A stretch of 64,000 nucleotides of DNA, taken from the NCBI GenBank assembly GCA_977030845.1, contig OZ365113.1, positions 14,074,001-14,138,000 on the forward strand. Reading direction: 5' to 3'. Source of the stretch: Fimbriosthenelais zetlandica. Lineage: Eukaryota. The notes beneath the pieces were generated by a model. The model searched no databases, was not told the origin of the DNA, and worked only from the letters and a program-made list of their open reading frames with translations. The position numbers and the translations under genes are program-made. This document shows, one piece after another, positions 1 through 22,320 of this stretch. The number at the start of each line of letters is the position of its first letter. Position 1 is the first letter of the stretch.

Positions 1-3000
1 CTCCCTAGAGGCCTATAACAACGTATAATCAAGCACGAGCCACTCGTATGCCGCTAGCAGGAAATGTGAGATGTATTACTATTTAAATGGGAGGACGGAA
101 CACATTATTAAATAAACTACTTAGGATCATTATACCGTAGTATAAAATGACTGGTGATCATCAGTATTTTAATTCATAACTTTGGTCTAATCTAGAATAA
201 TATTCAGTGCAATGTAACTTAAAGCGCTCAAAAACATCAAGTATAATATGATGATAAATGAGACGTACTTTATATTTTTATTCACGAAACATTTCTAAAT
301 GTAATTTCGCTGCTCTCGATATGAAATTTATTGGTTGAGGCAATATAGCCTTCTTCAAACCACTCGCTTCACTTTTTGCTCAGCACTTGGTAATTATAGC
401 AATTTAAAAGGCAATTAGACCTAGGGACTGTGATTAAATTAGGCTGGGTAATAACTGATGCGGGTTCTTGAGAATGCTATTCTGGCCTTTGTTAGCTCGT
501 TACACTTGGCTTGGAGATACATGGACTTCTTTAAGGCATGCCTCCTAAGAGTGATATGCATCGCAAAGTAGGAGCCGGGATGGCTACATCGATAGATTAA
601 ATTATATCCAGAAACTAATAATAGAAAGTTAGCAGTTTAACAATCAATTATCAATGGGTATGTATGGAAGATGAATATTCTTAGAGAATAATGTTTTTCT
701 CAAGTAATCAACGTAACATAGATCTATTTGCTGGAGCTTTGATCTGTGAGTATTGGCAGAAGGCAGATGACTGCCATTTGTAGATTCAAATTAATTCACT
801 GTGTTTGAAATTCACACATCTGTCATCTGATTTGGGTCTGATGTTTGTGAAGTTGGGTGTTGTCCATATTGTCAACTGCAAACAGCTAACAGCAAGCTTT
901 TTGATCTTTCTGCGGGATGCTTTCATTTACAGGCTGAAGAATTGCTGATATAAATTCAAATCTCTCCTGTGACGTCAGTAGATGGCCAGAGAGTAAAATG
1001 ATTTATCCCCTTCTAGCATCACATGCTCATTTATAGAGGCTATTCATGGTATAGTTTATATGGTAGGTACCGGAGAGCAGCACTGGGAGGTATAGGCCCT
1101 ATGCTTGGAATGGTCGATCTTCAAGGTAATAAATCGCTTTAATAAAATACCAAGGCCAGGTCTGCAGGAGGGGGATCAGAGCGAAAAATAGACAAATGTA
1201 TGGGGAATAAGCGTTGGCTAATTCATAACGACTGCGGACAATCTGATTGAGGCTATATTATAAGACTGTTGTCTTCATTTATTTATATTGTATTTATATG
1301 CTATTCTGTTTGGCAGGCTTTCCATGCCATGGAAGCCAAATGAATCGACTGAAGGATTAAATTAAATGCATGTTTTTTTTGCGAATGAAAAGTGGCTAAT
1401 TAGAATTGGTTCTCATTTTGCCAAACATAACCATGCTCTGCGAGAAGCGTGGGATGAGGTCAATGCAATTGATTCTCATGACAGGCAAATAATCAGGTAA
1501 CATTTGTCCCCGACCTGAGAGTAGCTCAGATATCAACTGGCTTCGATTGAATGATGAATTATTGATGGCTCTTCGATTGAATCATTCTCTGTACTTTCAA
1601 CAATCGGAAAGGGTAATAACCTCACTCTTCAACCTCTGAGCGCAATTTTGTTTGCACTGAAGCCATTCATGTACTATTCATGAAATCAACTAACAAGTAT
1701 TTGCCTAAATTGCTAAGAGTACTTGTCACGATTCAGAAATTGTATCCACCCCTTGAATACATCTCCGCAATTGCATTTTATGAACAATTAATATTTTACT
1801 TGGTCTAAAGTCAAGGCCATCTGCATTTTCGAATTTAAGAATCCGTGCGCAGGCCAAATATTGAGGTATTTCCAGTCTGGAGTGGGCAGAACAGATTGCC
1901 ACATGGATTTATTGGACAGTTCTCACACAGATCACGTTTCCTGTCTCTAGCAGCACAAATTAGTCTTTTCAGTCAGCCACCCACCAAGTCCTACTGGCAA
2001 ACAGAAGGAAAGCACATTCTCGGACAAGGATCGATTCAGGCAAATGATGTTTGGAGTCTGGCCATCAGAACCAGCCTGGACTAAGTAAATCTAACTACAG
2101 ACCTTCCTGTTTCTGACTTCTTACTCAAGTAAACCGGCGTCGATAGTTGAGTTCAGGAGCAGTATGAAGTTGTGTAAGTCTATGTATGACTATGGCAGGT
2201 TGAGGCCGTGATCGTATATAAGTGGAATGATCATTGGCAAGTATATTGAGAAAGAGGTGTTAATCGACATCATTCTCCTGTGGATGGTGAATTTCAAGCC
2301 CATGGGAAATCAAATCTCCTATTGCCTTGAATATCCCCTGGGATACTTTCAGGCTAAATTTATGTAACATTTCTTAATGGTACTTATTTATTTATAGTAA
2401 AACATGTTTACTTTAATTGGCTTATTTGGTAATCGGATTTTGATCAATTTCCGATAAAGTATTATTCATTCTTGATATTCGAAGTGTTCAGCTTGGTACC
2501 AAAGCGTCTAAAAGAAATGGGAGGGATTTATTTATGTTAACCTGAACCTTGTTGGATTTGTTCATGGCGTGCATTCACCTTTTTATTTAATCTGTATCTA
2601 CTAAGATTTAATTCCACTATATCCAAACAGTCAATGCCGAATCAGGATTGGGAATGATCACTTAAGCTTTAGCCACCCCCACCCCCACCCCTCCAGAGAT
2701 TCAATTCTTTGATACTCAAAGCAATCGACTGGAAAAGGATCTTAGGATGGTAACGTAGAGGCAGGGAGATTCGGTTTGCCCTGCAAATACACAGGTGGAG
2801 TCCATAATCCAACCCCTCACTCACGAGAGACGGCCGTATCGCAGCCCTTGGAAGTGTGGAACCCCAAGTGAAGTGTCTGGCATTGGGCTCCTTTGAATAG
2901 TCAATTTTCCACCCCAACCTCTTCTGCCTGCTGCAAGCTGATCAGATCGAGGGGCACGATTGCAATTCAAAGTGGTCCATTGTGGACTGGAGGGGGCAGT

Positions 3001-4619
3001 TCCAGGAAAGCCAAGAAATGATAATGCCTGGGCTCCAGCCAATCATAAAGCCATTCCTTTCTCTGGGTATTTATCTTCAAATAAGATATCTTTCCATTGA
3101 TAGAACTTGTTATTTAACTGTCTAGATCTTTGACAAAACAAGAAGGATTCTCTTTATGTGGCCTGTCAGCACTCGGCCTTCCCTAGAAGGGCACCCCGGA
3201 GTTATTGCATGGCCAAAGTATATTTCCATTAGGCGGAAATGGAATCACAGTGACTGTGGGGAGGGACAGGCATTTAACAGCAGTGCAATGCTGGAAGAGG
3301 TGGTAAGGAGTCGTAATGGTAGCCACAGGTTCCCATTCAGAGCTGAATAGTCAGTTTTGCCATCTGATAAAAGCCAGGAAGTAATCTTCACTGGCTCATC
3401 TCTAATTTTCTAAATGGGTATCCATCACAGGTTCCATTAGAGACAGGTGTCATCAGACATGGGTGGACTAGTGCATTTGCCGATTCATTTGCTACTCTCT
3501 CTTTGCATTTACTGATGCAATTATCAGGTCTCTTTGATGTTCACAATGCATCAAGTTATGCTCTCAACTGACATAAGAAACATAATCTGTGGTCTCAAAG
3601 GGCTGATACTAACCATTTAAAAGTCAGATGGTGGGGAGCCACTCTCATTTGGTCTATTAAATTGTATAATCCTGTGGTACCATAATATGTTTAAAGATCT
3701 GCTGAGATGTAGCTGAAGCAACAGATTTTCTTGATATTTTCTTATACGTAGAAGATGAGACAGATGACATACCAAGCTGTGGTGGGAATACCATTAGGGA
3801 CAGAAGCACTTACATCAATAGTCGACTAAGCTTTGGTGACAAACAGGAAGGCAGCAGTGTGGTGCATATTGGTATCTATACTCTGTCTGGTGGCACTAGA
3901 TAATGTGGCTTCAGAGCTATCAGGACTGGCTTCAGTCCAGAGCTGCTATCTGAAGCTCCACACTGATAGGTTGGAATGGGAGTTGACAATTATTCCTGGA
4001 TGCCAGCCCGTTTGGTGCGTGGGTAGAATGACTGAGTGTGAACTCTAGAGAAGTAGATGCCTGCCAAGTCCCCATAGACATCGACGTTTAGGAATATCTT
4101 ACTCTAAACTATTTAAGTCTTCTCTCTAACCCGACACAAGCCAACAAGAAAATCCAGCCAGCTCCAAGGCAGGCATAGTCAATGGAATGTACCATTTATC
4201 CTGAATAAATCAGGTCCCATAGAGTGCCTTTGCCCATCTGACTTGGAAGGCGATAGGTAACTTGTCGCAGCAATTTTTCATACTGAGACTTACTTCCTTG
4301 CTGTATTTTGCTGTGGTTGCTAGAAATCTCCATGATAATGGAAGCTGTCTTACTTGCAACAAGACACTAACCACATACACTCAAATGTCAGCAACTTAAG
4401 ATCTAAAAGGGCAGACCTCCTTTAATAAGCCTATACATCCGGAGTGGCATCACTGCATGGACATTCCTTTGTGAATTGGAATTGAATATCTGATTTTTGT
4501 CATTGACATCGCCCACACATATTACGCGCTGCTGATAAGAAGCATTAACATTCAGGCTGTATACAAGATGGAAAAGGGCAAAAAGCTCCAGCTACATATC
4601 GGCATATATATATACTCAC

Positions 4620-4727
4620 AATAGAGAGATCTACCGACCACCCACTGCGAGAAAAGCACATCAATCGGTTCCAACTAAGCAAATGCGCTATGGAGGAAGT
4701 CCTTTTAATCCTAACATGCTTCTGCAT
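4620..4727 (-). CDS. Candidate 108-nt phase 0/0 exon downstream of the zinc-finger exon
   Basis: Acceptor cctctctttttag| and donor |GTGAGT; open only in frame 0 (MQKHVRIKRTSSIAHLLSWNRLMCFSRSGWSVDLSI). Lacks the expected WxCxxC. Confidence 0.25.
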
Positions 4728-6834
4728 CTAAAAAGAGAGGTCTGGGTACCTCGGCCTATTGTATGGTACACTGCCTCGTGCTATCTACCAATAGAGCAAC
4801 AGCATGGCCTATTCTAGACCAATCGTTTATGTTAAATATTGGCCAACGGGGAAAAGCGAACTGGGTTGTTTGTCTTCAAAAGAGAGGTTATCTTCTCTGT
4901 GCTTGGTATTGATCCATGTTCTCCAGTACTATGGATCTAGTGCAATGGCTTTTTTTCTGATCACTGTTCCTACCATTGGAACCTGTATTATGTAAGTGGA
5001 ATTGGAAACACTGGGGTACAATTGGCGAGTATGGGCTTCCTTTTGCAAGTCCATGTAAGCAGTCTAGTTACCACTTTTTTATGGCCTCCACGTGAGCTTG
5101 TCCTAAACACCTTCCCTTGAGAACTGGTAGACAGGGTGATCCATCTTAGAGCAAAGACACACAGTGCTGATAGAATCGATTCACTTAGAGGTGGACCCCT
5201 GATGGCTATGTTGCATGCAGTCAGAGCTTCTGGTCTTCTCTCCAAAGGAACACTGTAATGTCTGGGTATATGGCTCATTAAGTCGGTCTAGTCATGTGTA
5301 CAGAGTCACTTTTATTTTGTATGCTCATTGTCTTATCTACAAGGTCTCAGCTCATATAATTGTTACCTGGAGATTTGGCAGGAAATGCTTCTTATACTAT
5401 ATGCATATCTTGGGATGTCCACGAATGACAAAACATCCAAGAAAGCTATGAAAGATATGAAGAAAATAAGGTAATATAAGGTCCCCCAAAGCCCCAAATA
5501 CAGATCTGCTGCCTGAGATAGGGAGGCGCCAGCTGGGGCCATAACTTTAAGCAGCTATTGAGAACGCTAATCGTATTTCATTAAAACGATATGCGGCAGA
5601 CACGACCATTCACAGGGGGAAATACAGCAAAAACACCATAGCCGGGGGGATATAAAAGCTAACATCAATCTCCAGCGTCTGATGAATGGGTTGCTGAGAT
5701 GACATCTGAGGCACCCTCTCTATAAATAATTTATTGAATGAAATTGAAAGAAATGCTTTCATTCAATCATAGGAGGCCATCCAATTTTGAGGCAGTGTTA
5801 AACCCAAAGAAAAATCATTGGTTTACATCTGATTGGATATGGGTACTGCTTTTGAAATTTGTTTTATTCACAGTCACAATCAAATGAGTTTGCTTTGGGA
5901 AGACTAAATCAAATCTTGATATTGTGGACATACTGTTACTGATCTGTCATGGCCCAGCAGCACTGTTTGACCAACCACTCTCTAGCTCTCATTTTCAGCT
6001 GTCCTGTATACAGCCAGAAGGGAGGATATCTACCGGGCTTCATCGGTGCGAGACAATCCATTTTGGAGTGCACAAACATTTAATTCTGCCTCCATACATC
6101 AAAGACAATACAGCTGAACAATCTAGTTCACAATGGCTCCGATGAGAATTCAACAGCGGGCAAGGCGAAATACATTCTGCTCTTCCCTGGAGCTATCTTT
6201 TTATAATCAGACTGCCCTCTGTTCCATGGCAACAGGGGAAGAGCACCCTTGGGATAAGACCTAGGCCCATTTGATGGTATAGAGATTAGATGAAAGTGTC
6301 GGGAATGAGCATGAAGTATAGAAGAAGAATGCAGATTGCTTGTCATATAATATACAATACTGAAATCTCAATCTGATATTCTTGACACTACTATATGTGT
6401 GATAGTAATGGTTTCCAAGACAAGCATGATCTGATTTGACTATACAAGCTCTTTCAATAATTTAACTGTTTCCTAAATATACATGGAGTCTGCTTCAGAG
6501 CAAATTCATGATTCATTAGCCCGTAGACTAATCAATGGCATACATGTATATTAATTAATAATAGCCTATTCGTGTTGTTGGGTGGGTGCTGTACTAAATT
6601 AAATAATTTATTTGATTAATTCTTACTGTGAGTAGGGAAAAATAAGCAAGGAAATCACTGGTATGAGGTTAAAGGGACTGAAGTAAAAATACAAAGTCCC
6701 TTTACCCAGCTCTGTGCAGTTAATTACATTATGATCTCCGTGTGGTGAAGTGGAGCTTGTTCCCTTCAGGAAGGGACTAATCCAGAGGGGGAGGCAGATT
6801 GCCGACGTCAGCATGTTTTGCGATCAGCTTGCAA

Positions 6835-6895
6835 GAGCAGAGTTTCTTGCGAGTGCCAAACAAAACCAGATTCACTTGAATCCCAGTTGAGAATT
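6835..6895 (-). mobile_element. Short non-LTR (CR1/L2/Crack-like) RT remnant
   Basis: With small frameshifts reads QLGFK-ESVLFGTRKKL, resembling the LGKTESILFGxKRKL motif that follows the RT core in L2/Crack-type LINEs. No flanking motifs found. Confidence 0.35.
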
Positions 6896-9122
6896 CTCCC
6901 CAGAATAATTGGTTTGATTTGAAATGCACCCTATTGTGTAGTTGGCGGGGTTCCTCTTGTGCGATGCAAGCTCCTATTAATATTTTTCCTTTAGAGTGAT
7001 AGGCCTTGATCGCGTTTAAGCAAGCATGTACAGGAACAAAGCAGTAGTCTAGCTGAAGAATTGGTACTGCAGAAGGAACCTAAACTTAATATATTTGCAG
7101 GTTCGGCATCAGACCCTCCTCTCCACTACCTTCCCTGCCCTCTATCCTGGTTCTATTTGTAGTATATGCACGGGTCAGATAAAAGGCAGGCCGAGATGGC
7201 TTTACATGTATGTGACAGGGGGATAAAGGTTGATTGTTGTATGGCCAGGGGCAGAGAAGGGTCGAATGTGTGTCACTGGTCGCCTATATATAAAAGACTG
7301 AATCTTTTTAGTCATGTCATGAAGATCGATGGTACCAGGCTTCTCGCTCTATATCTGTATGTGTAATGGAATCGGTGGAAGCGGGACATCCTGCAGTGCC
7401 TAACGGGAAGGTCAGAGGCTGTGATATACATCATGGCAGTGCACTTCCAGCTAAGAAAATTTAAGGTAATTTAGGTAGTGAAAAAATTGATCATGATGAT
7501 CATTATATGAGTTCCAAATGGAGGGGTGCAAATTGCATTCATTCATTTTCGAATATACTGTATGAGTACCTGTCCCCAACAGGGAGACGGCTAGTCAGAG
7601 ATTGAATAAGAAATATCTCATGTAATATATTGATATGGAATGAGCACCCAGCAGAGGGGTTGTCACCATTACAAATGAGACTGGATGACCCGCTGAGACA
7701 TCATTTGTTGACCAGGGTGGAAAGCACCGCAAACTTAAGCAGGCCAGTCATCCCCCTATATTCCCACCACCTACTGGTAGGCTCTGGTAGAGCACCGCCT
7801 GAGGACTGCACCTGATGCGATAGGAATTTGAATTATTGATAGGTACCAATCTGCCTGATAGAAGCTGTACCAGCCTTGACAGCACTGCTGCCACTGCCTA
7901 CTCCCACATGTTGGGCTATGCTGCTCTTGCGTGAGTTGCAGGTTCAGTTAGAGGCGCAATAAAATCACTCTAGCTGCTGTTCTTCTGGTACTGGTAGGCA
8001 TGATCTTGCTCCTGGTTTCAACCCCTGTAATTTTATTGCTCTATTTTGTCATAATATTATCTACTCATCATATATCACCATGGTAGGCAGTCATAACATA
8101 TTTTCTGACATATCTTCTTTTGATTTTTGTCATTCATGTTTCTCTTGCTTCAGCAAGCCAGATATGACTCAGACACATTGATAGACGATCCTTGGTGCAA
8201 AAACATCACCATTAATATGTTTAACCATCTTTGAAAAGGGCATAAACAGTTTTAAAATGAATTGCTGCATTGCAAGGAAATAGTTGTAAATTGTTTTAAA
8301 TTGCTGTGAGTTTGTGGTGAGTCATTCTCGGACTGGTATTGGGTGATCAATGGGTTGGAAGGATTTCAAGTATGGCTGTGCTCATTTGAAACACCAGACT
8401 AAATACGGAGCTCGCGTGGACGCGGAGGTGGAGGCCCTGAAATAATATCCTAGATCAATAGAGATTGATTACGCTGCTTTGACAATGATGAGACCTCAAG
8501 ATTTGAGGTCAGCCTGATCCTGATTAACGTTATATAGACCTTGCTTTAACAAGTATGTTATTACTAAGCTCAACTACCTTGCCGGCTTTGCACAAAAATA
8601 ATGAATTCTTTTTCGACATTTAGAATTAAAGCAGTTGGACAATTGACTCCAAGAGCAAGGATTGACCTCCGTTGATACAAAAAATATAAATTTATGTGTT
8701 CGAGAACGCACAAAAACCTATGAGGGATCGGGTTACCAATATCTATCGACTAAACTTAAACAGTCTGGGCCCTGTAAGCTATGTATGAGAGCCTCATATT
8801 AAAAGATGGATCATCCAGAAAAAAAATGTTAACAATCAGAATAGATATGGCATAAGTTATTACATGCTGGAACACGTAGTTATAGTTATTGGGCTGGAAT
8901 TTAGCATCAAATTGATATTGAAGGAAAAGGGATGGGGCAATACACAGGAGGGTCCTACTTTATTTCATACAGAACCTGATAATGGTAAAGCCAATTTAAG
9001 GCCACCTAAGTAATACCAGGACCCCCAATATAATGCTACTTCTAGCTATCTATCAAATAAGACCTGAGATGTGACACAAGATTTCTATGCAATTATTGTG
9101 TGAGTCAAATTATGTGTCCTAC

Positions 9123-9312
9123 CTTGTTTTGAATGGAGCTATCGTAATATCCGCAGTCAAGACAAACCATTCGCTCGCAGTCTACACAACAGTTCTGGTT
9201 GTCTTCACGGAGCTCCACCATTGTACAGATAGGACATCTGTTCTCAGCCTCCTCCAGGGATTCCCTCTGTTCTACAGTGTTAGTCATTGAGGTAAAGTCA
9301 TCCTCTAGCTCC
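9123..9312 (-). CDS. PCLO: Piccolo-like gene, zinc-finger exon (probable exon 2)
   Basis: Acceptor tctgtctttcag|G (phase 2, compatible with exon 1) and donor AAG|GTAGGA (phase 0); 190 nt. Reads (R)ELEDDFTSMTNTVEQRESLEEAENRCPICTMVELREDNQNCCVDCERMVCLDCGYYDSSIQNK. The CPIC...NxCxxC...VCxxCG spacing is that of the Piccolo/Bassoon/RIM zinc finger. Confidence 0.85.
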
Positions 9313-12300
9313 CTGAAAGACAGAATCGGTAGAAGAAATTAATTATTTTATTGAATATGCAGGGAACAATTCCCATGTCGGAAATCATAAAATCATAAAG
9401 AGAAACAGAAGCAACAATGACACCATATATTTGTATACTGAATTTTCTACATCGTAATTGCCAGATTGTGATTCTGGCGTTGAATGTAAAGCTGTCGCAA
9501 ATTCCAACATTGGATTGAATTTATGGAGATATGAATTAATAATTTGGAATCTGGCAGTGAGGAGTCTCTGGCTACTTTACCATGCATACTCTATACAGAG
9601 ATCGACTCACATATTTATGGGAAAATAAGATCAGCCAAACACAATGTGGCAGCAGCATCTATACCGTTAAGAATACCAGAGTATGTCCTGCAAAACTATT
9701 GCTAGGAGCTATACATACATTGGATATTGCTATAACTCTAAGAAGGGGTGAAGCAGTACTGGACTGTCATACTCTATGGATTTATCCATGGCTAGATCAG
9801 ACATTTCTTGACACTCAAACATCTCTGATCATAGCTTGAAGCATAATACACTTTCCTTTCCCCTACCTCAGGCAGAATGCTCTTTGAAGCATCAAGTGCA
9901 ACGACCAAGAACTACAAGAAGGTAGATGGAATATCAAGTGCATCAAACAGTACCCATATTGACATATCTATGTTCACTATTAGGGGACATAATAAGAAGG
10001 TGTGGCATGGCGGCTTTTCTTAGTCCCAAGGACACATTAGGCCCGTATAGCCTAAAATAGTTCAACCGTGTTGGCAATATGTAAGAGAAAATCAAGACTC
10101 ATAAAGGATGATATTTGTGCTATACCTTATTGCCAATGGGTTGGCAAGGCAGGCTTTTTTATCCTACTATATATTTTTATCCTATACTCTTACCACCCTT
10201 CATTGTTCTTCTCATCCTATCATTCTGAGAGCAGCAATTTCCAGGCAGGAGGCATTCTCTACTATGAATATGATAGCACCTCTTTAAAATTACATAGGAT
10301 CCATGTGAAATCCTATATTGATCGCTCGAGCTTGGATAATATCAGCAGCTTTATGGAAATTACAGAACAGGAGCTGATTGTTGCGTCCAATGGCCATCAG
10401 GTAAAGTAATAAGGGACCATTTCTTACAGGCTAAAAATGCAATTCAGAGACAAACAATAGCCTTTTTTTGATGGAAATGAAAAGAACCTGCCTCATATCC
10501 TGATAGGGTATACCGAAGGCAGCGCAGCCACCACGACGACCACCATCACTAGACCACATCCTCTTACCAATGGCTCGACCAACCCCATCTCTCTATCCCT
10601 TCCATTCCACCTCATTAAATGATTCTAACTAATTTTGAATACCATCAGGTATAGTCAGATACTCATTCAATCTAGTGCTCACCTGAAAAAACCAGAAACT
10701 GGTTTTATCTTACTCCAGACCTGGTGAAGAAACGACATGTTGCTGGAAAGCTGCAGCTAGGTGAAGGAGCAATGGCAAACAGGAGGTGGGGTAGGAGGGA
10801 GCTCTAGGTGGCAGGATGCCTGTAATGGAGAGCCGGTTGCAGCAGTCTTCCTACCTCAGAAGCTTGCTTTCAAATGGCTCAAGCTATCCAGGAACCATTG
10901 CTCTTCAGGCATATAATATTACCAATGGAATGTCCAGGCTATGTGGTTGTTGCGATGAGGAAGGTAAAATCATGCTAATTGCCTTTGTCGTATACCCCTT
11001 ACAATTACCCAGCCTCCTGGGTAGGTCTGCCATCAGCAAGAACCTCGGTATAGGCATTGGAATGCACAATATAATTATACAGGAGGCCTTGCAGCAATAG
11101 ATGCAGCATATCCCAGCGTTAGAGGTTATCCAGGTATAGAGTGAGTGCATTTGTGCATGCCTGCATCTACGTATTAGCATCACAGACGTAAATTCTCCCC
11201 TGTCTTCTGCATGCTGCTGGCCATTGCTGCTACCATCACTGCACCATTCTCGCCCTTCATCAGCTCTTTCATCGCTATGGGGGTATTTCTTCAACAGGCA
11301 CGCCCTCAATGGTGACAGCTTGAACTAGCCTGGTATTGGTCCAGTTGCTTTAAAGGAGGTGCACCAAGAGAATAAAGTGCAAGGGTTCAGAGAGAGCAAG
11401 TTGTGCACCTGCTATAAGGCCCCAAGCATAACATACTTCATATTACGGCACAGAGGTATAGAGGAAGCCATATTACATATATATGTAACCCATTTCCGCC
11501 ACAGAAATTGCTGTCCTCGTAGGTGTTACTTGGTGAGCATTACCAGAAACAAACGAAGACTTAGGCGAACGAGGCCATTATGCCTACCAACCGTGTACAG
11601 CCTGGCCCGAGGCAAATCTCATGTCAGCCAGCAGTATACATGTATGCATGACATTCTTCTGCTCAAAATGTTGGTAGAGTGACTATTTTACTTTAGCCCC
11701 AGCGCCATTCAGACCTCGGGATACCATTCCCATGCTCGTCCCCAACAAATCTGATGGGAGGACAAATAAAGGAGACAGTTAGCCAGCCTGTGTGGCGGAC
11801 TTATCAGCTCGTTTTTACACCCTCATGCGGGTTACCGATGCTTTTAGTGCCTCAAAAGCAGTCATGTGGGAAGGCTGGAAAAATCTGATACCCTCCTTGC
11901 CAAATCAGGCAGAGAATGGAGAATGTTTTCTTCGAGCTGTTTGTGGAAAATGAAGCGAAGCTTTTTGCCTGGATATCTGCAGCTAAGTGGCAACCAATGT
12001 TATAAATTTAAAGAGGTATTTTCCCAGGTTACTACAGATTTTCCAAGATATAGCTGGCACTTGACTCCACTGACCTACCAACCACCAGGCATGATTGCAA
12101 TGAGAATATAGGTAAACATTAATACCTATCTGCTTGATGTACATAACTAATAGAACGGTCATAGCTCTCTCCATTCCAGTGTTTTATTGCTGTGGACCTC
12201 TTTTTCTACCTCACACACCGACTTAGCCACCCATCTCCTCTGTTTCCGCGGGTGGGTAGTCAAAGAAAACGGTGTTTTTACGAATATTGAGAAACACCAG

Positions 12301-15300
12301 GATCAGAAACTTCCTTCCTCACAATCTGTGAATAACAAGACTGGTGAAAAACCTTCCGGGTTTTGCCAGGAAAATAACCAATTTGTGTGGGGTTTTTTTC
12401 AGCAGTTGGTCTGTCTGGAAATTAATCAGGGGAACAGACATTAAAGGCAAGCCCCGGCATCAGTATCTGATGACAAGAACAAGGCTCTAATCAGTAGTAG
12501 CCTGATCAGCCAGATAGTAATGGCCCGAGGCCAAGCAGGCTGTAGGCCTTGGTGAACATACATTGAGGGAAATGTCAGTGGTAAGGGGAGTAAGGGAGAG
12601 GAAATGATAGAGATATTGAGAGGAGGGAACAGAGAGAACAGACAAATGAACAGTCGGAATGGGGTTCTGAAATTGACTGGACTCCTGGGTGGTGAGCAAT
12701 AGGTTATCAGTACAATGAAATCTCTGTAATTAGTTACATAACATTACAATTTTCGGTAAATATATTACCCCAGTGATATCATTTATTGGTGGTCATTGCA
12801 ATTCAGGTTCTGGTAGCTGGAACCCCTATTAGTATCTACACTAATATTGTGTATTATGGCAGGCAACCAGCTTTATCCTCATTTCCGCTCGCTCCATGCA
12901 CCTGAGACTAACCCAGGAGGCCTGAAATGGAGGTCAAGCACATCTATTCATCGTTTAGTGAGTGCAGATCATTATTGCCCCCTGTATCGACCCAGGGTTA
13001 TTCACGGAACCAGGAGACCTTCACATCTTATACATTAAAGTATAGGTAGCCAACCACAAGAGACTTCACCTCAATATGGATGAATATATCCCTCGACCTA
13101 GAGCAGAAAGAATAAGTCCATTGAAAAGACTGTATGCTGCAAATTACCTAGCTCGCTCGCAATAATATTCATTCAATCCAAGACTCCATAATGGTTGGTT
13201 TTTCCTCCAGCCATTGTTAATTTGCTCCTAAATGATGGGATGTGCTTTTACATTCTCCCTCAGGCAATTAATCACAGAAGTTACAATTGTTGCAGCATTC
13301 TTTCCCAGATGAGTAATGACTATGGCGGACTTTAAGTAACGTAATCTTAGCTGATAAGGACCGAGTCTGATTACAGTGTCCCATTCCTACCAGCCATCAT
13401 CAGAACTATCTGATGGAAATGGATTTCACTGCTGAACCAATATCACCAGTCTTATCAGCGCACGTGGGTGGGGAATATTGTATCTATTCAGATACAGGGG
13501 ATGTGTCCCTACAGGCCCAGCCAAGCTATAGGTCTACATAGATCCAGTTCCAGCAGAAAAAACAACAACTACCACATGTGGATGTTATCGCAGAATCATT
13601 TGCATTGATCACCGATGCAGAAAAATGACGAGATGAGCCCGTTGTCTTGTAGGACATTACAAATTGAACAATAGTCTCTGGGTGGTTTCACAAACCAGAC
13701 TAGTTAGTATTTCAATTGTTCTTGAAATATGTCACACGTCAGTAACAATATGGGCTCAAATAAAATTTGCACCATTTGATATTTTCTGGGCTGTTCAGTG
13801 TAAAGCCAGATGAATGGTCCGCAAAAGAATAATTGGGAGGGACATAAAGAGGATACTAAAACTATTTTAGAGTGGCTTATATGCACGTCTACATTGTTTT
13901 ATTGTAGATTTTCAATTTTAACAGGCTGATGGAAATTTAAATATTTCCCTCCGCTTCCCACATTAAAGGGATTACACTCCGGGATTCTGAGCATTTCTTT
14001 ATAGACGTTTCTGTATACAGTGTGGTTGAGGCCTGACAACAGCAAGCACAGTAAGGCTTAGTTTCTGAGCAATGGCTCGCGCCAGGCTCGTGACAGGCAG
14101 TGCTGTCCATTACGTTGACAGTTCCCATTATAGTGCAAGGTTTATTCAGCCAGTAGAAAATTGCCGCGCTTGCCAACGGCTCAGAGTTTTAAGGCTTTCT
14201 ATCAGTTATTGGCAGTAATAGGTCAGGAAATATTGTCATTAAATGTCAGGTTCCCCTCATATAGTATATGTATCGCTTAATATGTTCATACAGATCGAAA
14301 GTGTTTTTCAGTATGCATGCAAGAGATTGCACATGCTTTCAATATGACATTGTACTATAACTTGTGTGTCCTGTTATTGGGTATTGGGTAGACCAATATG
14401 GATAGCATTCGATCATGGGGCAAGGTCAGCAAGAAGGAATTGACCTACAGATTATGAAAAATGAGACAAATCACCCACAAGCCTATCTCTGGGGTTCCAA
14501 CTCTAAATGCTAAGCCGTACGTACTATGGTGGGGTCGATCATGTGGACCATGTTTGCATGGCCAGAAGGACAGGACTCTACATCTCGGTTTGAAAAACGC
14601 ACATTTCTATTCGATAGCAGTGGGCTATGGCCAAACAAGCCAAGCCAGAATTTCCTCAAGAGACAGGAGTTCCTGACCGAACCATCATTTTTCTTTTTGC
14701 CCACCCCAGCACTGCACATCACCACCAGGATGCGCAACCCCACATCCCATGGCAATCTCTGGCATAGTAAATCCCCAGCTACAAATAGTCCATGGTTGGA
14801 GCCGTTACAAAGCAGACATAGGTGCCGCCTGTTGGCCACTGATTATATAGCCGAGCAATATTATGGTGATTTATGTCAAATGTAGGGTCCATTTCTTATC
14901 ACCATAAAGTGCTGGCCACATGTAATATTGGCAAAATATCATAGAGTCAATATGACTGCATGTCATCAGGTCATTGATACTGGTCTTTGGCAGCTCGCAT
15001 TCTGCCCTCAGCTTCTGATACCACCTCAGTCAAGTTTGAGGGTGTAATTTCCAGAAAAAACGATTGAGCTTTATTAGATATATCTGATGGTCCCAGACAC
15101 GTTGATGATTCACCAGAAAACATAGAGATTTATTCCTCGGGTTCCTATGATGTATATAGACCAAAGAAGACGCCTCTCAGGATACATCAGTTTCCAGTCA
15201 GGAACCACCATCTTGACGTCCTACATGGGCCTGGCCATACATAGATGGGTAAATACACAGTAATAGCAGTTTACTCAGACTTACATTTCCTTCTTGGCCA

Positions 15301-18300
15301 TTAAAAGCTGCTTGCAGCTTAATACAGCCTTGTCGTGACTCATAGCAATGGCTGGAGGTGTTACATTATTGATGGGGCATGTTGGCAAGCTGCCAAGTGT
15401 AACAAAACTATCTTTTCTCATTGCTTGTCCGACTCACCGATCAGCCATTGGGTTGACACAGGTAATTGGGTGGAATTGCAACATTCAGCTGGCCTTAGGT
15501 CAGTTTCTGCATATTTTGTCTTTTCTTATGTCAGAGATGACGTTGCTAATTGTCAACACATCTAGCTCCACAGCTAGAATGCTTAATGTTCATGGGACAC
15601 AATGAATAATAAATGTTGTACCAGATTTCGCTGGTCCTGGAGGAAAGACATTCATGGTTTTTACTAAAATAAAAAAAATGTGGAAAATGATATACTTTAT
15701 ATTAGTATAATATTGTTGTTACAATCTAAAGCAATTACAGACCCGAAGAAGATCCAAAGTAAGATTGCTTTAATTATGCTTTAGAATGTAGACATTACTC
15801 ATAACTGACAATAACTCTCATACTCCTGTCATTACGTGGCACTGGTCTCCCTTGTCTGTAACATGAAGGCATTTAGAATCAGCACATAGAAGCTGCGCCC
15901 AGAATCGGCCAAAGAATTTAAGGTCAACACAATTAACCTTATTATCTGATGTCTGTCTATCTTTAACGAATCAAACGTGCTGGGTGACAATATTTGATGA
16001 ATCATGCAGCAAAAAAACTGTTGAATTCACAAGTAGGTTATCCAGAAAGAAAATTACTTGTTCTTTTTTCGCGACTTAAGTTATGTTGAGAAAACTGCTG
16101 AAAGGTCATGAGTTTTAAAGTGTAAAAAACTATTTCCAACCCAGTCTTTGTTGGGATTGATTGCTGCAAGGAGCACTGGATCTGAATTGTGAATTTCAAT
16201 CGGCTTAACATGTAAAATTTGATACCAATATATGAATAATTTATTTCATCATTGAATGTCAGCTAATAGCTAATGGAATATTCAAGTGGTAAACGTCTAA
16301 GCTGAATATTGTCAAATGTTTCATAATGAAATACTTCCTAGTATTTTTTACATTTCCATGTCTAATAGGATGTTCTGTACACTCATAAGGTATGGTAGAA
16401 CCAGGACATATTAGACAGACTTAATAATAGCCTCAGTATATTGTTGAGCCTAATGAGTGAGTGGACTGCCATGACATGTCATGGTACCTGTAGGCAGGAG
16501 ATCGTGACTTCCTGTTTGCAGCCTTTTTGACATTTCCCTTTTCTGTGTTGTAATAACCACGAGGCAATATGAGAGGCACCTTGCTATCAGGTCCTGGCAT
16601 CAAGTCTCCTCCAAAAAAGTTATCCTCGCATAAACAAGGTCATGTAAGGATACAATATTTCTGAAACCTACAAGTGGATAAAAAGGTTATATTTCACACA
16701 TAGGTTTGACATATTGTGGTTGAAGTACATGTATGTGCTGCATTATGTCACGGAGCAGGCATCATGTGGGCATCTCCCGTGTCTCTTCAGCATGTATATT
16801 GTCACTAACACCCACCAGATTGCCCACAGCGTAATGATGAGAATCGTTAGGACATGAAGACAGAGCTTTTAACTCAGGAACAGTGCGAGTCAGGCCGTGT
16901 AGTTTAATGCAAATACCCGATAGAGTGAATACTGAGCATAGGCAATCGAACACTGCGGCCTGCCTTGCTGGCCCTGCGCTCTACAAGCCTTGCTACTCAT
17001 GGATCCAGTCAACAGATCGATAAGGGTAGCGATCAATACGATCAAACAAAACCCTGTGTATAAAGCCTCCATTCAGCCACCATTGAACACCCCTCCCTCC
17101 CACTCAGCTCCTCTTCCCTCGGGAACAACTGGGTCAGTTTGATTCCTCAAGGGAGTTGCTATATAGCATACATATATAAAATGTGCTGAGCGCTCACCAA
17201 AGTATCAGCTTATAAATTATTCTTCAGGGTATATAGGCATAATATATATTATGGGTACTTGTTCTATAATGCTTTGAAGTAGACAATGACCATTTTAAAA
17301 GCCAAATGGTTGTCATTGCTTTGTGGCAAATACACACAGTTAATTCATTCAGTTATTGTTTTATGTCTCCGTGTCATTCAATAAATTAAACAAGTTATAT
17401 ACCATTTTCTTGGCAATTGATGAGGAAAACAATCTACATCAAAGGTCAAAATCTGTCAGTAATGATTCCTTTAAAACATTCAATTATCAGGGGATATGAC
17501 TATTTTTGTAATGTCACCATATTCATGTGTTTGCTTCCGTCTTGAGGCAAACATGAGGCCTGGGTGTAATGAAGAAGAACTGACAGGGAAACATGCCAAG
17601 TTGAACATCTGTTATAGCCTGATGGTGTTTGTGGTCCTCTTTGGCTGATAACCTCAGACCTTACTGAGCCACTCTTGGCAGGAGCATATTGCTGAAAGTA
17701 GGTCGTATTTGTGATGGCGGATGGATATCGATCGATTAGTCCGAGTAGGTTGTGTCTAGGCATGGGATGTACATGAATGTCACACGGTCTTAGTTTGCTG
17801 TGATGTGACAGTTAAATACTGTACCCCGACTCCATCAGCACTATACCCATCCTACATCCACCCACCCACCATGATCGCACGCACATCGACTGACAACCAC
17901 ACCTACACTTTCTACTTCATAGTTCACCCAATTGCCTTCACAAGTCGATTCTCCATTAAAAAACATGCATGCAGGGATTTACCACTGCAGTCCACATTGC
18001 ATGACTCTGAATAGTTGCTAGCATTAAATTCAGAATAATGGAAGTATTTGAAAAAAAGATTAAGGAGTCATGCAATCTAGGTCATTTGGTGCACTGCAGT
18101 CCTATCCCAAGTGGGCGGCAAACCAACAGGCGTAGTGTTGGCCAAATGGAACTACATAATGTTGAATGCGGCAATTTCAAAAGTAAAATTGATATCAAAG
18201 AACCTATAGATGGCTTGTTTGCGGTGCTGCTTCCATGCATTAGCATGATGGATGGGAAATGTTGTGAGAGTGAGCAGACACGGTCTCAATCATTCCCTCT

Positions 18301-18968
18301 CACCGCTACTCACCAAACCCGTCCTCAATCATACCAACTAAAGCTTCTCATCATAGACAATGGTGGATAATCAATGATTGATAAGGCACAGTCATGCTTC
18401 AGTGCATGATTCCGGCCAGAATACCTGTTAAACTCCCACTACCTCGGTTACAATGAAAAAAGTGGAATAAGATTGAACCCCTTATGAACAATACAACGGC
18501 AATATTATCTGGACTGTTGAGCAATCAAATTTAGGTCAATGATTATGCCGAGAGAGAATAATGAACAACCTATTAGCGGTTGTATTTAATTCCTGTGTCC
18601 TCTCGTGTATACTTGCTGATCTTTAGAAGTTTGATTATGACTGCTTGAATGTTGGCCTTGTATTTGTATTTGGCTGAAAACCTCATTGCATTTATTCACA
18701 AATTGTACATGAGGTCTGTGAACCTTTTCTTTTACTAATCTTTGAATCTGTTCCCCTGTAATAGCCTTAACACATTATCTCGTGCTAATTGTTAGTTGAA
18801 TCTATTTTTTTCATCTTCTATCAAATTAACCACCAGTACACCGATTGAACACTTATTGAACACCTACATATGGGTAGAATTGACATCAGAGGATAATATC
18901 AAATAATTTGTAAATAATTAAACCCGATCGTTTTCAAAATTATAAGATAAGATAGTATGTTATCTCAC

Positions 18969-19555
18969 CTAAGCCTTTGTGTTTCTTCCTCCTGCATCAT
19001 ACGGGCACGAGCCATGACAGCAGCAATCTGTGAGCGTTCCTCCTCACTCAGATGACTGAGGTCCACCTCTGGAGGTTCAATGGGAGACAGATTACACAGG
19101 GAGGACACAGAACTCCTCCTCGACATTCGACCTGGAGGAACTGGGCTTGGACCTGGAGGTACAGGGCTAGGTCCTTGAGGTAACATACCTCCTTGTCCTA
19201 CACCTGAGGCAGCCCCTGCTGCTGGTTGGGGGGTAATGGGCCGAGATCCAGTCTCCATAGCTAGACCTAGGCTTGAGGCTTGTATTCCTGATGCACCAGC
19301 TATCATGCCACTCGGGTCACCTCCCACATGTTGGCCATGGATTCCAGTTTGTAAGTCTCCTTGCCCTGGAGGTGGTGGTGGTGGAGGTAAGGGGTGTTCT
19401 AGTATTATATGTCCAGAATCAGTAGTGGATGGAGCAGCAGCTGGAGGAATACCAGCAACTGCTGAGTGCTGAGCAGCGACAGCAGTAGCGTAATCTGATG
19501 ATGACGGGCTTATACCTTCTGCAGCTCCCTCGGGTAAACTCGTCTCGTTCCCCAT
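18969..19555 (-). CDS. PCLO: Piccolo-like presynaptic scaffold, first coding exon
   Basis: ATG at 19555 with an in-frame TAA 21 nt upstream (the ORF track starts at a TTG). Reads MGNETSLPEGAAEG...EPPEVDLSHLSEEERSQIAAVMARARMMQEEETQRLR, closely matching vertebrate Piccolo as I recall it (MGNEASLEGEGLPEG...ADLSQLSEEERRQIAAVMSRAQ). Ends at phase-2 donor CTTAG|GTGAGA. Confidence 0.9.
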
Positions 19556-20639
19556 CTCCAATCTCGACTTTTATTACTCTGCTCCACTCCCTCTACTCAT
19601 TTGGTGTCTTATCACTGGCTGTCATAATTACAGATCATATCACAATGTGATGTGAGCGAATGTTCATGCATTTAACGTTTAAATGCTCATTTAAATTTAC
19701 TCAAAAACGAGCATGCTGTAACCCATATGGAGGCCATTGTAATTGCCCCTTACATATAGAGGGTTATCGTTTATATTATATTCATTACGGCAATTCATAC
19801 ATACAACCATATTCATTACGGTAAATCATGTATGCATGGAGGCTGATATGAATGTCAATATTTATTGGCATTTTACCGTCAGTGGTTGAGACATGATGCC
19901 CTGCATAGTTATTAATACCAGTATGTGGCCTTCGTTCTCACCCCAGCCACTGATGGCCTCCAAGCTGTTATTTCATAATAGGTTCTCATAAACTGCTCGT
20001 TTAACGCTTGATGAAGTCCCCCCAGCTCAACCTGAGGGCAATTACTGCTGATGCACCAGAAGAAAATAACATTGAGAGGGAGGATGTCATTTCTTGCCTG
20101 TAATTCACATTGTTACTAGTTAATGCTTGGCCTAATACAATTGTCCTAAGGCGAGCATACAGAAATGTGTTGGTATCCAACTCATGATTGATTGATATTC
20201 AGATACTGCAATAATAGTTTTGCTATTCTGTTCTGTACTCCTGAGAATGATGGTGGCCATCAACGACCAATACCTATTCATGCACTGGGAAGTCCTACAT
20301 GCCTATCAACCAAAATCAGAGCAAGTCCCTACTCTGCTTCATACATAGCACAGGTGCAATCAACTCTACAGTGTTAATATTCCAAAGCCAAGCACTGGTT
20401 GTTTCAATGGCAAAGTTTTATACTCTCACCACACAACTAGCCAATGGCATGATCCACATAGACACGCACGTTAGGAATTATATATGGTGTAGGTATAAGG
20501 CATAGGGCTCACTATCGGCTCTGTGCAAAGCTTCCTCAGGAGATTTATCCTGAACCACTGGAGTGTTTACCAATAAATCCTCCCATGCAGTCTACTTGGA
20601 CATTTCCACCGCTAGACGTGGCTCTCTTATATATTGGTG

Positions 20640-22320
20640 ATGGTAGTGAAGCTACGTATTGTTACCCCTTATCATTTCCAACCATTCACCTCCTTCATCT
20701 CCTCTCCTCCTCCTCTTCCTCCTCCTCCTAGGCCAACGACAAGAATGGCTTCACATCCCTTCACCTAGCACTGATAGCCCCACCACAGCTTCCTCTCCTC
20801 CTTCTCCTCCTCCAGGGTTGTGCTGTGAAAACACCACCTCTCTTCCTCATCCTCCAGTAACCTCCCTTCTACAGATCCCATCCTTCGCGGGGTCCCTGTA
20901 TACTCCTATGTATGTACTATGCATTATAGATGAAGAACTTGCAGTGGGAGAATGGCTTTCGATTCCTCAGTGGCCATTAGTAAAAAGCCTATGTACAATA
21001 GACCTAAACGGTGATTGTCCAGGTGGTGGGTGGTGGTGGTGGTGGTTGGTGGTGGTGGAGGAGCTAAGGCCTGCTGTTCTGTAGTGGATGTTCTGAAGCA
21101 GCATAGACTGCTGCTTGGCTGCTGGCCTGCTAGAGCCGATAGCAGGAGAAACTCACTTGTCAGCAGCAGCAGCAGTTGTAGCAGCAGCAGTGGCTTCCAT
21201 TGCTTTTGCAATGCTCAGGCCTCACAACAGCAGATGCCAGACTCTCTACAATGCTTTACACATAGGCAGCAATAGTGATCTTCATACAGCAGCTGTAAAA
21301 GCAGATGAAGGGACGGCTGCAACATTAGCAGCAGCAGAGGTAGTGCCAGCAGCAACAGCAGCAATGTTCACTCTCCACCCACTATAGTCCCCTCTCTTTC
21401 TCATTGCCTTTCTGCAGATTGTATTGCTTTGGCCGGAGCAGGCAATGGGTGAGAGCCCAGCAAAGCAGAAGCCGAACCTGAAGTAGCAAGCTGAAGCAGA
21501 TGTTTTCCAATGGTGTTGAATCCGGCGGCGGCAGATGAAGCAGCGTTGGACAGAGTATCTGTGTCGGAGTCTGTGAGCAGCACAGGGTTCCAGCAGCCAC
21601 ACTACTGAGGGAAGCCACCGGCAACTCTGCTTCTGCCACAGCAGCACATCCAATGACCTCAGATCCAGTAGACACTCCTCCTCTGCCCATCTCTCCTCTT
21701 CTCTCCTCTCTTCCTAATCCTCCTCCTCATTCTCTTCTCACAATCCTGTAAGCGAACAATCCTGCAACCCTTCATCCCGAACTCTTGATACAAACCCATA
21801 TATGAGAAGCAATCCTATATATACCTGTGAAATTTTTTCTTTAAACACAACTATCTCTCTTCACCTCACCTGATTACCTGATTCCCGTTTGAGGAGGATT
21901 CTCGATGAACTTGCTGGCAAAGCTGCAACAAGGCTGGTGTAGGGTAGGGTTACCTGCTGGAGGGGCCACACTTAAAACCTGGCCATACGGTGTCGACAAC
22001 AGGCAGGCACCATGTGTTAGAGAAGGCTGGGGAGTCAGCAGTGGCGGCCGTTGGTTCTCACTGAATGCTTGGCTTCACCACTGGGCTTCTCTATGTGTCC
22101 CCATCATCATCCTCCTCCCCCTCTCTCCTCTCTCCCTACTCTTCCTCCTCTCTACTACCACCCCACACCCTCAACACCACCTAGTACAGGGAGAATGGCA
22201 AGCATGCAGAGCGGATCAGGCATTAATGAATGTTGGTGGGTGGTTTGGAGGTGGTGGGAGTATTATAGTGGCAGAGGGGGTTGTGGTCTGCCTTGGCTGA
22301 TGGGCATTGGGGGAAAGTAG
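20640..22320. repeat. GC-enriched low-complexity block with (CCT)n, (GGT)n, (CAG)n and CT-rich tracts
   Basis: Runs at about 20695-20730, 21025-21060, 21160-21190, 21690-21740 and 22110-22150 generate many overlapping low-complexity ORFs on both strands. Confidence 0.8.

What the first reader, a model, noticed from the sequence alone, without database searches (positions are those of the whole stretch)
9123..19555. Piccolo N-terminus with a compact RIM-type Rab-binding helix joined directly to the zinc finger
Seen: exon 1 (phase-2 end) and exon 2 (phase-2 start) splice to DLSHLSEEERSQIAAVMARARMMQEEETQRLR|ELEDDFTSMTNTVEQRESLEEAENRCPIC. Known (sequences recalled from memory): in vertebrate Piccolo the DLSxLSEEER helix is separated from zinc finger 1 by several hundred P/Q-rich residues, and Bassoon lacks the helix. 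In RIM1/2 the helix runs on (..EEEKEQSVLKKLHQQFEMYKEQV..) directly into the finger, forming the Rab3/Rab27-binding unit. LRELEDDFTSMTNTV keeps the RIM L..L...F......V spacing, and the intron falls near the RIM splice-site-A position. Inference: this may be an ancestral Piccolo that is still a Rab effector, intermediate between RIM and vertebrate Piccolo/Bassoon.
Basis: partly seen in the sequence, partly recalled or inferred. Interest (0 to 1): 0.75.

Follow-up and report, generated by a model that had tools for sequence, protein, structure and literature searches.

The report
Invertebrate Piccolo with intact Rab-binding-type N-terminus
The first exons of an invertebrate Piccolo gene encode, in one compact unit, all three sequence elements of the Rab3-binding domain of RIM and rabphilin, of which vertebrate Piccolo keeps only scattered remnants, so this Piccolo may still dock synaptic vesicles through a Rab GTPase; the binding itself is untested.

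Summary
On the minus strand, exon 1 (window 19555-18969) and exon 2 (9312-9123) have GT/AG sites and join in phase 2 to give the quoted peptide.

Both exons, with the same boundaries, occur in other animal genomes. A diverged relative shows no conserved block inside intron 1.

The gene is a Piccolo orthologue, not RIM:
- Its PDZ and C2A exons match solved Piccolo domains best.
- The intron inside the finger lies where vertebrate Piccolo and Bassoon have it.
- A separate RIM gene and a probable Fife-like gene lie elsewhere in the genome.

It carries the fourth CxxC followed by SGMWY. A distant orthologue has the canonical SGAWF, the second Rab3 contact element, which the literature reports absent from vertebrate Piccolo and Bassoon.

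Pfam FYVE_2, the Rab-effector finger family, matches in order: exon 1 tail at profile 1-29 and exon 3 at 93-115. The first intron has the same place and phase as in this genome's RIM.

Not shown: transcripts (no sequencing run was listed), a fold of the joined module, and Rab binding. Invertebrate Piccolo is already published, so this is a moderately interesting new member of a known kind.

The parts
18969..19555 (-). Coding exon 1 (195 codons plus 2 bases). It holds the start Met, an MGNETS N-myristoylation-type consensus, a Pro/Gly-rich disordered stretch, an RRSS motif and the first half of helix alpha1.
   Evidence: Orthologous exons are P0001, P0002 and L051:14240-14830.
19538..19555 (-). 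MGNETS: Gly2 with Ser6 fits the N-myristoylation consensus. The first 10 residues are identical in the related species.
   Evidence: Wang 1999 reports that the extreme N-terminus is homologous between aczonin and Bassoon. Myristoylation itself is inferred.
18969..19069 (-). First half of helix alpha1 (EVDLSHLSEEERSQIAAVMARARMMQEEETQRL), RIM-like.
   Evidence: AlphaFold2 on alignment A2 gives a helix at residues 32-55 of 56 with pLDDT 87-96, running to the exon end. Pfam FYVE_2 matches profile positions 1-29 at 12.9 bits. The only paralogue in the genome is RIM exon 1, at 43% identity.
9313..18968 (-). Intron 1 (9656 bases, phase 2).
   Evidence: GT..AG sites. No colinear conserved block against the 12.5 kb orthologous intron of a related species by blastn or tblastx.
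9123..9312 (-). Coding exon 2 (1 base plus 63 codons). It holds the second half of alpha1, a short linker with an invariant Ser, and the first three CxxC pairs of the zinc finger.
   Evidence: The 14-species alignment is A1.
9255..9312 (-). Proposed continuation of alpha1 (R)ELEDDFTSMTNTVEQRESL, with conserved hydrophobic residues at positions 2, 6 and 13 and an invariant Ser18.
   Evidence: Alignment A1. The same spacing after the intron is seen in the rabphilin-like and Slp-like paralogues. AlphaFold on exon 2 alone was not confident here.
9150..9236 (-). Zinc finger, first three CxxC pairs (CPIC..CVDC..CLDCG).
   Evidence: Pfam zf-piccolo, profile 2-37 of 60, E 0.0078. All 14 orthologues hit zf-piccolo and 13 hit FYVE_2. 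A profile of A1 against the PDB finds Slp4, rabphilin-3A, RIM2 and melanophilin fingers.

Best explanation
Window 9123-19555 holds the first two coding exons of an invertebrate Piccolo orthologue. Together with exon 3, about 23 kb further on and outside the window (contig C19:14059771-14059631), they encode in order: a myristoylation-type N-terminus; a disordered Pro-rich stretch; a long RIM-like helix alpha1 that is split by a phase-2 intron; a single double-zinc finger of the Piccolo type; and directly after the last CxxC an SGMWY element, the counterpart of SGAWFF in RIM and rabphilin. These are the three elements that form the GTP-Rab3/Rab27 binding surface in rabphilin-3A and RIM, where the finger holds the two flanking helices in place. 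The likeliest function is therefore that this N-terminus binds a GTP-loaded vesicle Rab of the Rab3/Rab27 group and so ties synaptic vesicles to the large scaffold, whose PDZ and C2A domains lie downstream. Vertebrate Piccolo would then be the derived state: a P/Q-repeat insertion between helix and finger, finger duplication, loss of SGAWFF and loss of Rab3 binding. Shown here: exon structure, conservation, domain matches and shared intron positions. Inferred: helix continuity across the junction, myristoylation, and Rab binding and its specificity.
For: Splicing and phases fit for exons 1 to 5. For Piccolo identity, the C2A exon matches Piccolo C2A 1rh8 at 87.6 bits against 59.5 for RIM2 2bwq. 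The PDZ exon matches only 1ujd, named KIAA0559 in the PDB, which I take from memory to be human Piccolo. The intron lies between the 3rd and 4th CxxC, as in vertebrate Piccolo and Bassoon (Nonet 2012). For RBD elements, exon 3 alone hits Pfam FYVE_2 at profile 93-115, E 0.0012, and rabphilin-3A 1zbd_B residues 99-123, including SGAWF. Exon 2 hits 1zbd_B residues 52-91. The exon 1 tail hits FYVE_2 at profile 1-29. For conservation, exon 3 is 97% identical over 38 residues in a relative whose introns no longer align. A distant orthologue reads SSGAWFHG. For shared introns, this genome's RIM exon 1 ends ...KEQEILR in phase 2 and its later exon starts QIWACNLC...KTGQWYHG in phase 0, as in this gene. 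The rabphilin-like and Slp-like paralogues have their first intron at the same FYVE_2 profile position, about 30. A 60-residue stretch without Pro or Gly spans the junction. The predicted helix runs to the end of exon 1. For contrast, vertebrate aczonin lacks SGAWFF and bound no Rab3A (Wang 1999), and none of the 15 vertebrate-type multi-finger Piccolo proteins retrieved has SGxW[FY].
Against: There is no RNA evidence: no sequencing run was listed. Every RBD match is a weak hit on a single exon, below Pfam's cut-off; only their order and agreement make the case. The joined peptide was never scored, folded or docked. AlphaFold on exon 2 alone gives its first 20 residues pLDDT of about 52 with only a 5-residue helix. 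The motif is SGMWY, not SGAWF, in this species. Noc2 carries SGAWFF yet is reported there not to bind Rab3A, so the motif does not guarantee binding. The exon 2 half of the finger scores as zf-piccolo, whose known partners are PRA1 and Siah1.
Confidence: 0.55

Rival explanations
1. The layout is an inherited RIM/rabphilin-type domain, but it no longer binds a Rab. As in vertebrate Piccolo and Bassoon, the finger serves other partners (PRA1, Siah1-type ligases, or Munc13 C2A as in RIM), and the helix has another role.
For: Vertebrate Piccolo keeps the 19-residue motif yet bound no Rab3A, even as holo-protein. Noc2 has SGAWFF but is reported not to bind Rab3A. Exon 2 scores as zf-piccolo rather than FYVE_2 in this species. 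The known finger partners are PRA1 and Siah1.
Against: Strong purifying selection acts on exactly the two elements that contact Rab3 in rabphilin: the alpha1 tail shows 28 synonymous against 4 non-synonymous differences, and exon 3 has 1 change in 38 residues. The canonical SGAWF is kept in a distant orthologue.
Confidence: 0.3
2. The direct exon 1 to exon 2 join is not the main transcript. Lineage-specific or alternatively spliced exons in the 9.7 kb intron 1 (as at RIM splice site A) or in the 23 kb intron 2 separate helix and finger in most isoforms.
For: No transcript data could be obtained. The intron sits where vertebrate RIM is alternatively spliced (general knowledge: Fukuda 2004, Genes Cells). 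Low-complexity spacer exons would escape a conservation test.
Against: Between two diverged species, only the exons are conserved across the whole exon 1 to exon 2 interval. Exon boundaries and phases are conserved in many genomes. The finger needs exon 3 to be complete.
Confidence: 0.1
3. The gene is a Fife- or RIM-type family member rather than a Piccolo orthologue.
For: The gene has one finger, not two. No C2B was found before the next gene. No Fife structure exists in the PDB, so the PDB ranking cannot separate Piccolo from Fife. No tree was built.
Against: A separate RIM gene lies on C21, with helix exon, finger exon, PDZ and C2A. A third compact locus on C10, with a FYVE_2-type finger and a PDZ 4 kb apart, fits Fife. 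This gene is very large, with single exons of more than 1000 codons, has the MGNE.. N-terminus, and has best matches to Piccolo PDZ and C2A. Orvis 2022 reports Piccolo plus Fife plus RIM in many invertebrates.
Confidence: 0.07

Closest known systems
Vertebrate Piccolo/Aczonin (PCLO) and Bassoon
   Same: MGNE.. N-terminus; the DLSxLSEEERxQIAAVMxR motif (Piccolo); Piccolo-type CX2C finger with the intron between the 3rd and 4th CxxC; PDZ and C2A nearest to Piccolo's; giant low-complexity exons.
   Different: This gene has one finger instead of two. Helix and finger are about 25 residues apart instead of several hundred P/Q-rich residues. The helix continues for about 40 more conserved residues. 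An SGxW[FY] element follows the finger, which is reported absent in aczonin and Bassoon. No C2B was seen.
RIM1/2-alpha (UNC-10) N-terminal Rab3-binding domain
   Same: The alpha1 motif is 43% identical to this genome's RIM exon 1. It has the same phase-2 intron after ..LR and the same phase-0 intron before the last CxxC. The SGxW[FY]/TGQWY element follows the finger. PDZ and C2A lie downstream.
   Different: The finger's first half scores as zf-piccolo. PDZ and C2A are closer to Piccolo. The protein is much larger. A distinct RIM gene exists on contig C21.
Rabphilin-3A Rab-binding domain (PDB 1ZBD, Pfam FYVE_2 PF02318)
   Same: Colinear weak matches of exon 2 (chain residues 52-91) and exon 3 (99-123, with SGAWF). 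The first intron falls at the same profile position, about 30.
   Different: The second intron lies elsewhere: in the rabphilin-like paralogue it is between the 2nd and 3rd CxxC. There is no tandem C2A-C2B directly after the domain. Sequence identity is low.
Invertebrate Piccolo, Fife, Chalumeau and Clarinet (Orvis et al. 2022, PMC9282427; Bruckner et al. 2012, 2017)
   Same: This gene belongs to the published set of invertebrate Piccolos. The genome also appears to hold RIM and a Fife-like gene.
   Different: Those papers, as far as held here, do not describe the contiguous helix-finger-SGAWF unit or propose Rab binding for invertebrate Piccolo. The supplement with the domain figure was not available.

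Membership tests
Piccolo/Bassoon family | Piccolo-type double zinc finger (Pfam zf-piccolo PF05715) | tested here: inconclusive
   Exon 2 alone scores 17 bits, E 0.0078, at profile 2-37 of 60, below the 30-bit cut-off because only half of the domain lies in the exon. All 14 orthologous exons hit it, best E 4.9e-6. Exon 3 scored FYVE_2 rather than zf-piccolo.
Piccolo/Bassoon family | Intron between the 3rd and 4th CxxC of the finger | tested here: met
   Exon 2 ends after CLDCG..QNK and exon 3 starts LQEWVCNIC. The vertebrate position is given by Nonet 2012. This genome's RIM shares the position, so it does not separate Piccolo from RIM.
Piccolo/Bassoon family | PDZ and C2A closest to Piccolo's | tested here: met
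   C2A exon: 1rh8 Piccolo 87.6 bits, fly RIM 4ts6 64.6, RIM2 2bwq 59.5. PDZ exon: the only hit is 1ujd KIAA0559, E 2.5e-10. That KIAA0559 is human PCLO is my own knowledge.
Piccolo/Bassoon family | Conserved extreme N-terminus and the 19-residue Rim-like motif | tested here: met
   The gene has MGNETSLPEG and DLSHLSEEERSQIAAVMAR. The paper gives DLSQLSEEERRQIAAVMSR, which is 16 of 19 identical. The vertebrate N-terminal letters themselves are recalled, not tool-derived.
Piccolo/Bassoon family | Two fingers, Piccolo-Bassoon homology regions, C2B | tested here: not met
   Only one finger was found, and no further CxxC pair in the large exons. No C2B was seen before the next gene. The large exons have no Pfam match. 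These may be vertebrate innovations, or small exons may have been missed.
RIM/rabphilin/Slp Rab-binding domain (Pfam FYVE_2 PF02318; SHD1-finger-SHD2) | N-terminal helix alpha1 (SHD1, L[ST]xL[ST]xEE..I..V..R) | tested here: met
   The motif is present. FYVE_2 matches at profile 1-29, 12.9 bits, E 0.13, and 4 of 5 aligned sequences hit. The predicted helix has pLDDT 87-96.
RIM/rabphilin/Slp Rab-binding domain (Pfam FYVE_2 PF02318; SHD1-finger-SHD2) | Helix runs directly into a Cys4-Cys4 finger | tested here: inconclusive
   A 60-residue stretch free of Pro and Gly spans the junction, and hydrophobic spacing is conserved in exon 2. AlphaFold on exon 2 alone is not confident, and the joined peptide was not folded.
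RIM/rabphilin/Slp Rab-binding domain (Pfam FYVE_2 PF02318; SHD1-finger-SHD2) | SGAWF[FY] element after the finger | tested here: met
   The element reads SSGMWYSG here and in a relative, and SSGAWFHG in a distant orthologue. FYVE_2 matches at profile 93-115, 19.5 bits, E 0.0012. The 1zbd_B alignment covers SGAWF.
RIM/rabphilin/Slp Rab-binding domain (Pfam FYVE_2 PF02318; SHD1-finger-SHD2) | Whole-domain score over Pfam's gathering cut-off (27.2 bits) | not tested
   The spliced peptide has no reference and was not typed into a tool. The two end pieces alone add up to about 32 bits, which is a rough sum only.
RIM/rabphilin/Slp Rab-binding domain (Pfam FYVE_2 PF02318; SHD1-finger-SHD2) | GTP-dependent binding of Rab3, Rab27 or Rab8 | not testable with these tools
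   This needs biochemistry, or at least a complex prediction with an intact Rab of this species. Neither was available.

The most novel reading that the evidence does not exclude
Invertebrate Piccolo is a working Rab3/Rab27 effector, a second Rab-dependent vesicle tether at the active zone beside RIM. The vertebrate Piccolo/Bassoon lineage lost this link through spacer insertion, finger duplication and loss of the SGAWF element. That would give a concrete origin for Piccolo/Bassoon from a RIM-like Rab effector, and an animal model in which the Piccolo-vesicle coupling is Rab-dependent.
Probability: 0.45. Interest if true: 0.6.

Novelty: new member of a known kind. Interest (0 to 1): 0.45.

Why it matters
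How Piccolo and Bassoon hold synaptic vesicles is still unclear. Their zinc fingers resemble those of the Rab3 effectors, but the vertebrate proteins did not bind Rab3. An invertebrate orthologue that keeps helix, finger and SGAWF-type element as one compact unit under strong purifying selection suggests that the ancestral Piccolo was a Rab effector. It also gives a short, expressible fragment of about 120 residues with which to test this directly. If it binds, invertebrate active zones have two Rab-dependent tethers, and the vertebrate state becomes an interpretable loss. If it does not, the module shows that the SGAWF layout is not sufficient for binding. The point is of interest mainly to specialists in active zones and Rab effectors. 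The gene family and its presence in invertebrates are already published.

Tried and rejected
- RNA evidence: two searches for sequencing runs (exon 1 as RNA; 4 kb around exon 2 as any kind) listed none.
- Word-index protein search: exon 1 gave two exon-only ORFs, exon 2 gave one, and the exon 3 ORF gave none. No full-length or spliced invertebrate orthologue was obtained.
- Exhaustive search with exon 2: it returned exon-only ORFs plus vertebrate-type Piccolos with 6-15 fingers.
- Genome-wide zf-piccolo scan: it did not reach our exon at genome-scale E-values.
- PDB search with the exon 1 tail: no hit.
- ESM Atlas with a 426-residue exon: no usable hit.
- AlphaFold on exon 2 alone: low confidence, and it neither supports nor refutes the second half of the helix.
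- Joined 306-residue N-terminus: it was built only inside scripts. It has no reference, so it was not typed into Pfam, structure or complex tools. No whole-domain score, fold search or Rab docking was done.
- Complex prediction: not used, because no intact Rab sequence of this species was available and a test with split chains would not address the claim.
- 'This is RIM': rejected because a separate RIM gene exists.
- Bruckner 2012 and the Orvis 2022 supplement: not held.
Full report
**Observation.** The window is contig C19:14074001-14138000 of a 447 Mb genome. The gene lies on the minus strand.
- Exon 1 (19555-18969) opens with ATG and reads MGNETSLPEG. After a Pro/Gly-rich stretch it ends ...PPEVDLSHLSEEERSQIAAVMARARMMQEEETQRL plus AG before a GTGAGA donor.
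- Exon 2 (9312-9123) follows a pyrimidine tract and CAG. Its first G completes Arg. It reads ELEDDFTSMTNTVEQRESLEEAENRCPIC...CVDC...CLDCGYYDSSIQNK and ends in phase 0 before GTAGGA.

**The rest of the gene.** No exon in window 1-9122 completes the finger, so I fetched the contig below the window.
- Exon 3 lies about 23 kb on, at C19:14059771-14059631. It follows TTTCAG in phase 0 and reads LQEWVCNICQKRRHIVLSSGMWYSGHP....
- Exons 4 and 5 fit in phase.
- Further on come exons of 1226, 374, 426 and 1052 codons, two PDZ exons and three C2A exons.
- There is only one finger, and I saw no C2B before the next gene.

**Is the exon 1 to exon 2 join real?** No sequencing run was listed, so the evidence is comparative.
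- Two other assemblies carry exon-1 ORFs that end at the same residue.
- Thirteen assemblies carry exon-2 ORFs with the same start and end.
- In one relative I walked the contig. Exon 1, exon 2 (intron of about 12.5 kb), exon 3 and exon 4 are all present.
- Across the whole exon 1 to exon 2 interval, blastn and tblastx find only the two exons conserved, with conservation stopping at the splice sites.
- Codon comparison shows 28 synonymous against 4 non-synonymous differences in the exon 1 tail. In exon 3 there is one amino-acid change in 38 residues.
- A conserved constitutive exon in between is therefore unlikely. A lineage-specific or alternative one is not excluded.

**Which family?**
- The C2A exon matches solved Piccolo C2A best: 1rh8 at 87.6 bits, against 59.5-64.6 for RIM C2A structures.
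- The PDZ exon matches only 1ujd, the KIAA0559 PDZ.
- The intron between the 3rd and 4th CxxC is where vertebrate Piccolo and Bassoon have it (Nonet 2012).
- The 19-residue motif that Wang et al. 1999 found shared by aczonin and Rim is present, 16 of 19 identical.
- The genome has its own RIM on C21, with helix exon, last-CxxC exon, PDZ and C2A.
- A third compact locus on C10 has a FYVE_2-type finger and a PDZ 4 kb apart. It fits Fife, but I could not fetch it.
- RIM plus Piccolo plus Fife is what Orvis et al. 2022 report for many invertebrates. I file the gene as a Piccolo orthologue. No tree was built.

**Is the N-terminus a Rab-binding-domain layout?** In rabphilin-3A and RIM, Rab3 is contacted by the helix before the finger and by the SGAWFF element after it, and the finger positions both (summaries). 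All three parts are present here, in order.
- The exon 1 tail hits Pfam FYVE_2 at profile 1-29 (12.9 bits; 4 of 5 aligned sequences hit).
- Exon 2 orthologues hit both zf-piccolo (14 of 14) and FYVE_2 (13 of 14).
- A profile of the exon 2 orthologues finds Slp4, rabphilin-3A, RIM2 and melanophilin fingers in the PDB.
- Exon 3 alone hits FYVE_2 at profile 93-115 (E 0.0012). It also hits rabphilin 1zbd_B residues 99-123, across SGAWF. Exon 2 hits residues 52-91 of the same chain.
- The element reads SGMWY here and in the relative. A distant orthologue from an NCBI assembly reads SSGAWFHG.
- Wang et al. state that SGAWFF is absent from aczonin and Bassoon, and that they found no Rab3A binding.
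- None of the 15 vertebrate-type multi-finger Piccolos retrieved has SGxW[FY].

**Shared introns.**
- RIM exon 1 in this genome ends ...EEEEKEQEILR with AG|GT, in phase 2. Our exon 1 ends ...QEEETQRLR in the same way.
- RIM's later exon starts QIWACNLC...KTGQWYHG in phase 0. Ours starts LQEWVCNIC...SSGMWYSG in the same phase.
- The rabphilin-like (C11), Slp-like (C29) and C27 paralogues also break the helix at FYVE_2 profile position 30-35.
- After that intron, all show hydrophobic residues at positions 2, 6 and 13, as do the 14 exon-2 orthologues.
- This supports common descent of the whole helix-finger unit.

**Helix continuity.**
- A 60-residue stretch without Pro or Gly (residues 163-222) spans the junction.
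- AlphaFold2 on the exon 1 tail gives a helix with pLDDT 87-96 that runs to the last residue but one.
- AlphaFold2 on exon 2 alone is weak for its first 20 residues, with pLDDT about 52.
- Continuity is therefore likely but not shown. The linker from the conserved RRxS to CPIC varies by about 10 residues among species. This is the place where vertebrates carry the P/Q repeats.

**Verdict.** The architecture is supported and extended by exon 3. Rab binding is a reasonable but untested inference. Invertebrate Piccolo and the finger homology are known. The contiguous, selected three-part unit in a Piccolo is, as far as the held literature shows, not described.

Noticed in passing
Window 9258-9260 (Ser18 of exon 2) and window 19117-19128 (RRSS in exon 1): An invariant Ser in an RRxS-type context sits just after the conserved part of the helix in all 14 exon-2 orthologues. 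A conserved RRSS/RRGS lies just before the helix in exon 1. These are candidate basophilic-kinase sites flanking alpha1.
   Followed up: partly
Proteins P0003, P0005-P0009, P0011, P0013, P0014, P0016, P0019: These are very long proteins (2000-7200 residues) with 6-15 tandem zf-piccolo fingers and vertebrate-type Piccolo N-termini. This matches the teleost finger amplification described by Nonet 2012 (PMC3484663).
   Followed up: partly
Contig C19:14057637-14053960 (locus L030:4460-8137, minus strand), exon 5 of the same gene: This single exon of about 1200 codons is largely made of degenerate DPRDPHG-type repeats, with no Pfam match. A second giant exon (L029:497-3652) is rich in SPRD/RDR repeats. 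Both look like species-specific spacer expansions, like the repeat spacers of vertebrate Piccolo.
   Followed up: no
Contig C10:38836601-38836816 and C10:38840922-38841029 (plus strand): A FYVE_2-type finger in one exon and a PDZ exon 53% identical to this gene's lie 4 kb apart. This is probably a compact third member of the RIM superfamily (Fife-like).
   Followed up: no
Contigs C1:67450419-67450592 and C11:18277696-18277869 (also C1:67452183 and C11:18279378): The rabphilin-like C2 exons appear twice with identical scores on two contigs. This is either a recent duplication or a duplicated stretch in the assembly.
   Followed up: no
Contig C19:14017118-14016534 (locus L014): A tandem array of a 27-base unit reads GMGRELRVL about 20 times in one frame. 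It lies downstream of the neighbouring GH47/EDEM-like gene (about C19:14024000-14027600).
   Followed up: no
Locus L033:3790-5133: A reverse-transcriptase (RVT_1) ORF lies about 5 kb upstream of exon 1 of the orthologue in another species. It is a retroelement insertion near the promoter region.
   Followed up: no
Window 20001-22000: G+C rises to 0.478, against about 0.40 elsewhere, just upstream of exon 1. This may be the promoter or 5' UTR region of the gene. It was not examined.
   Followed up: no
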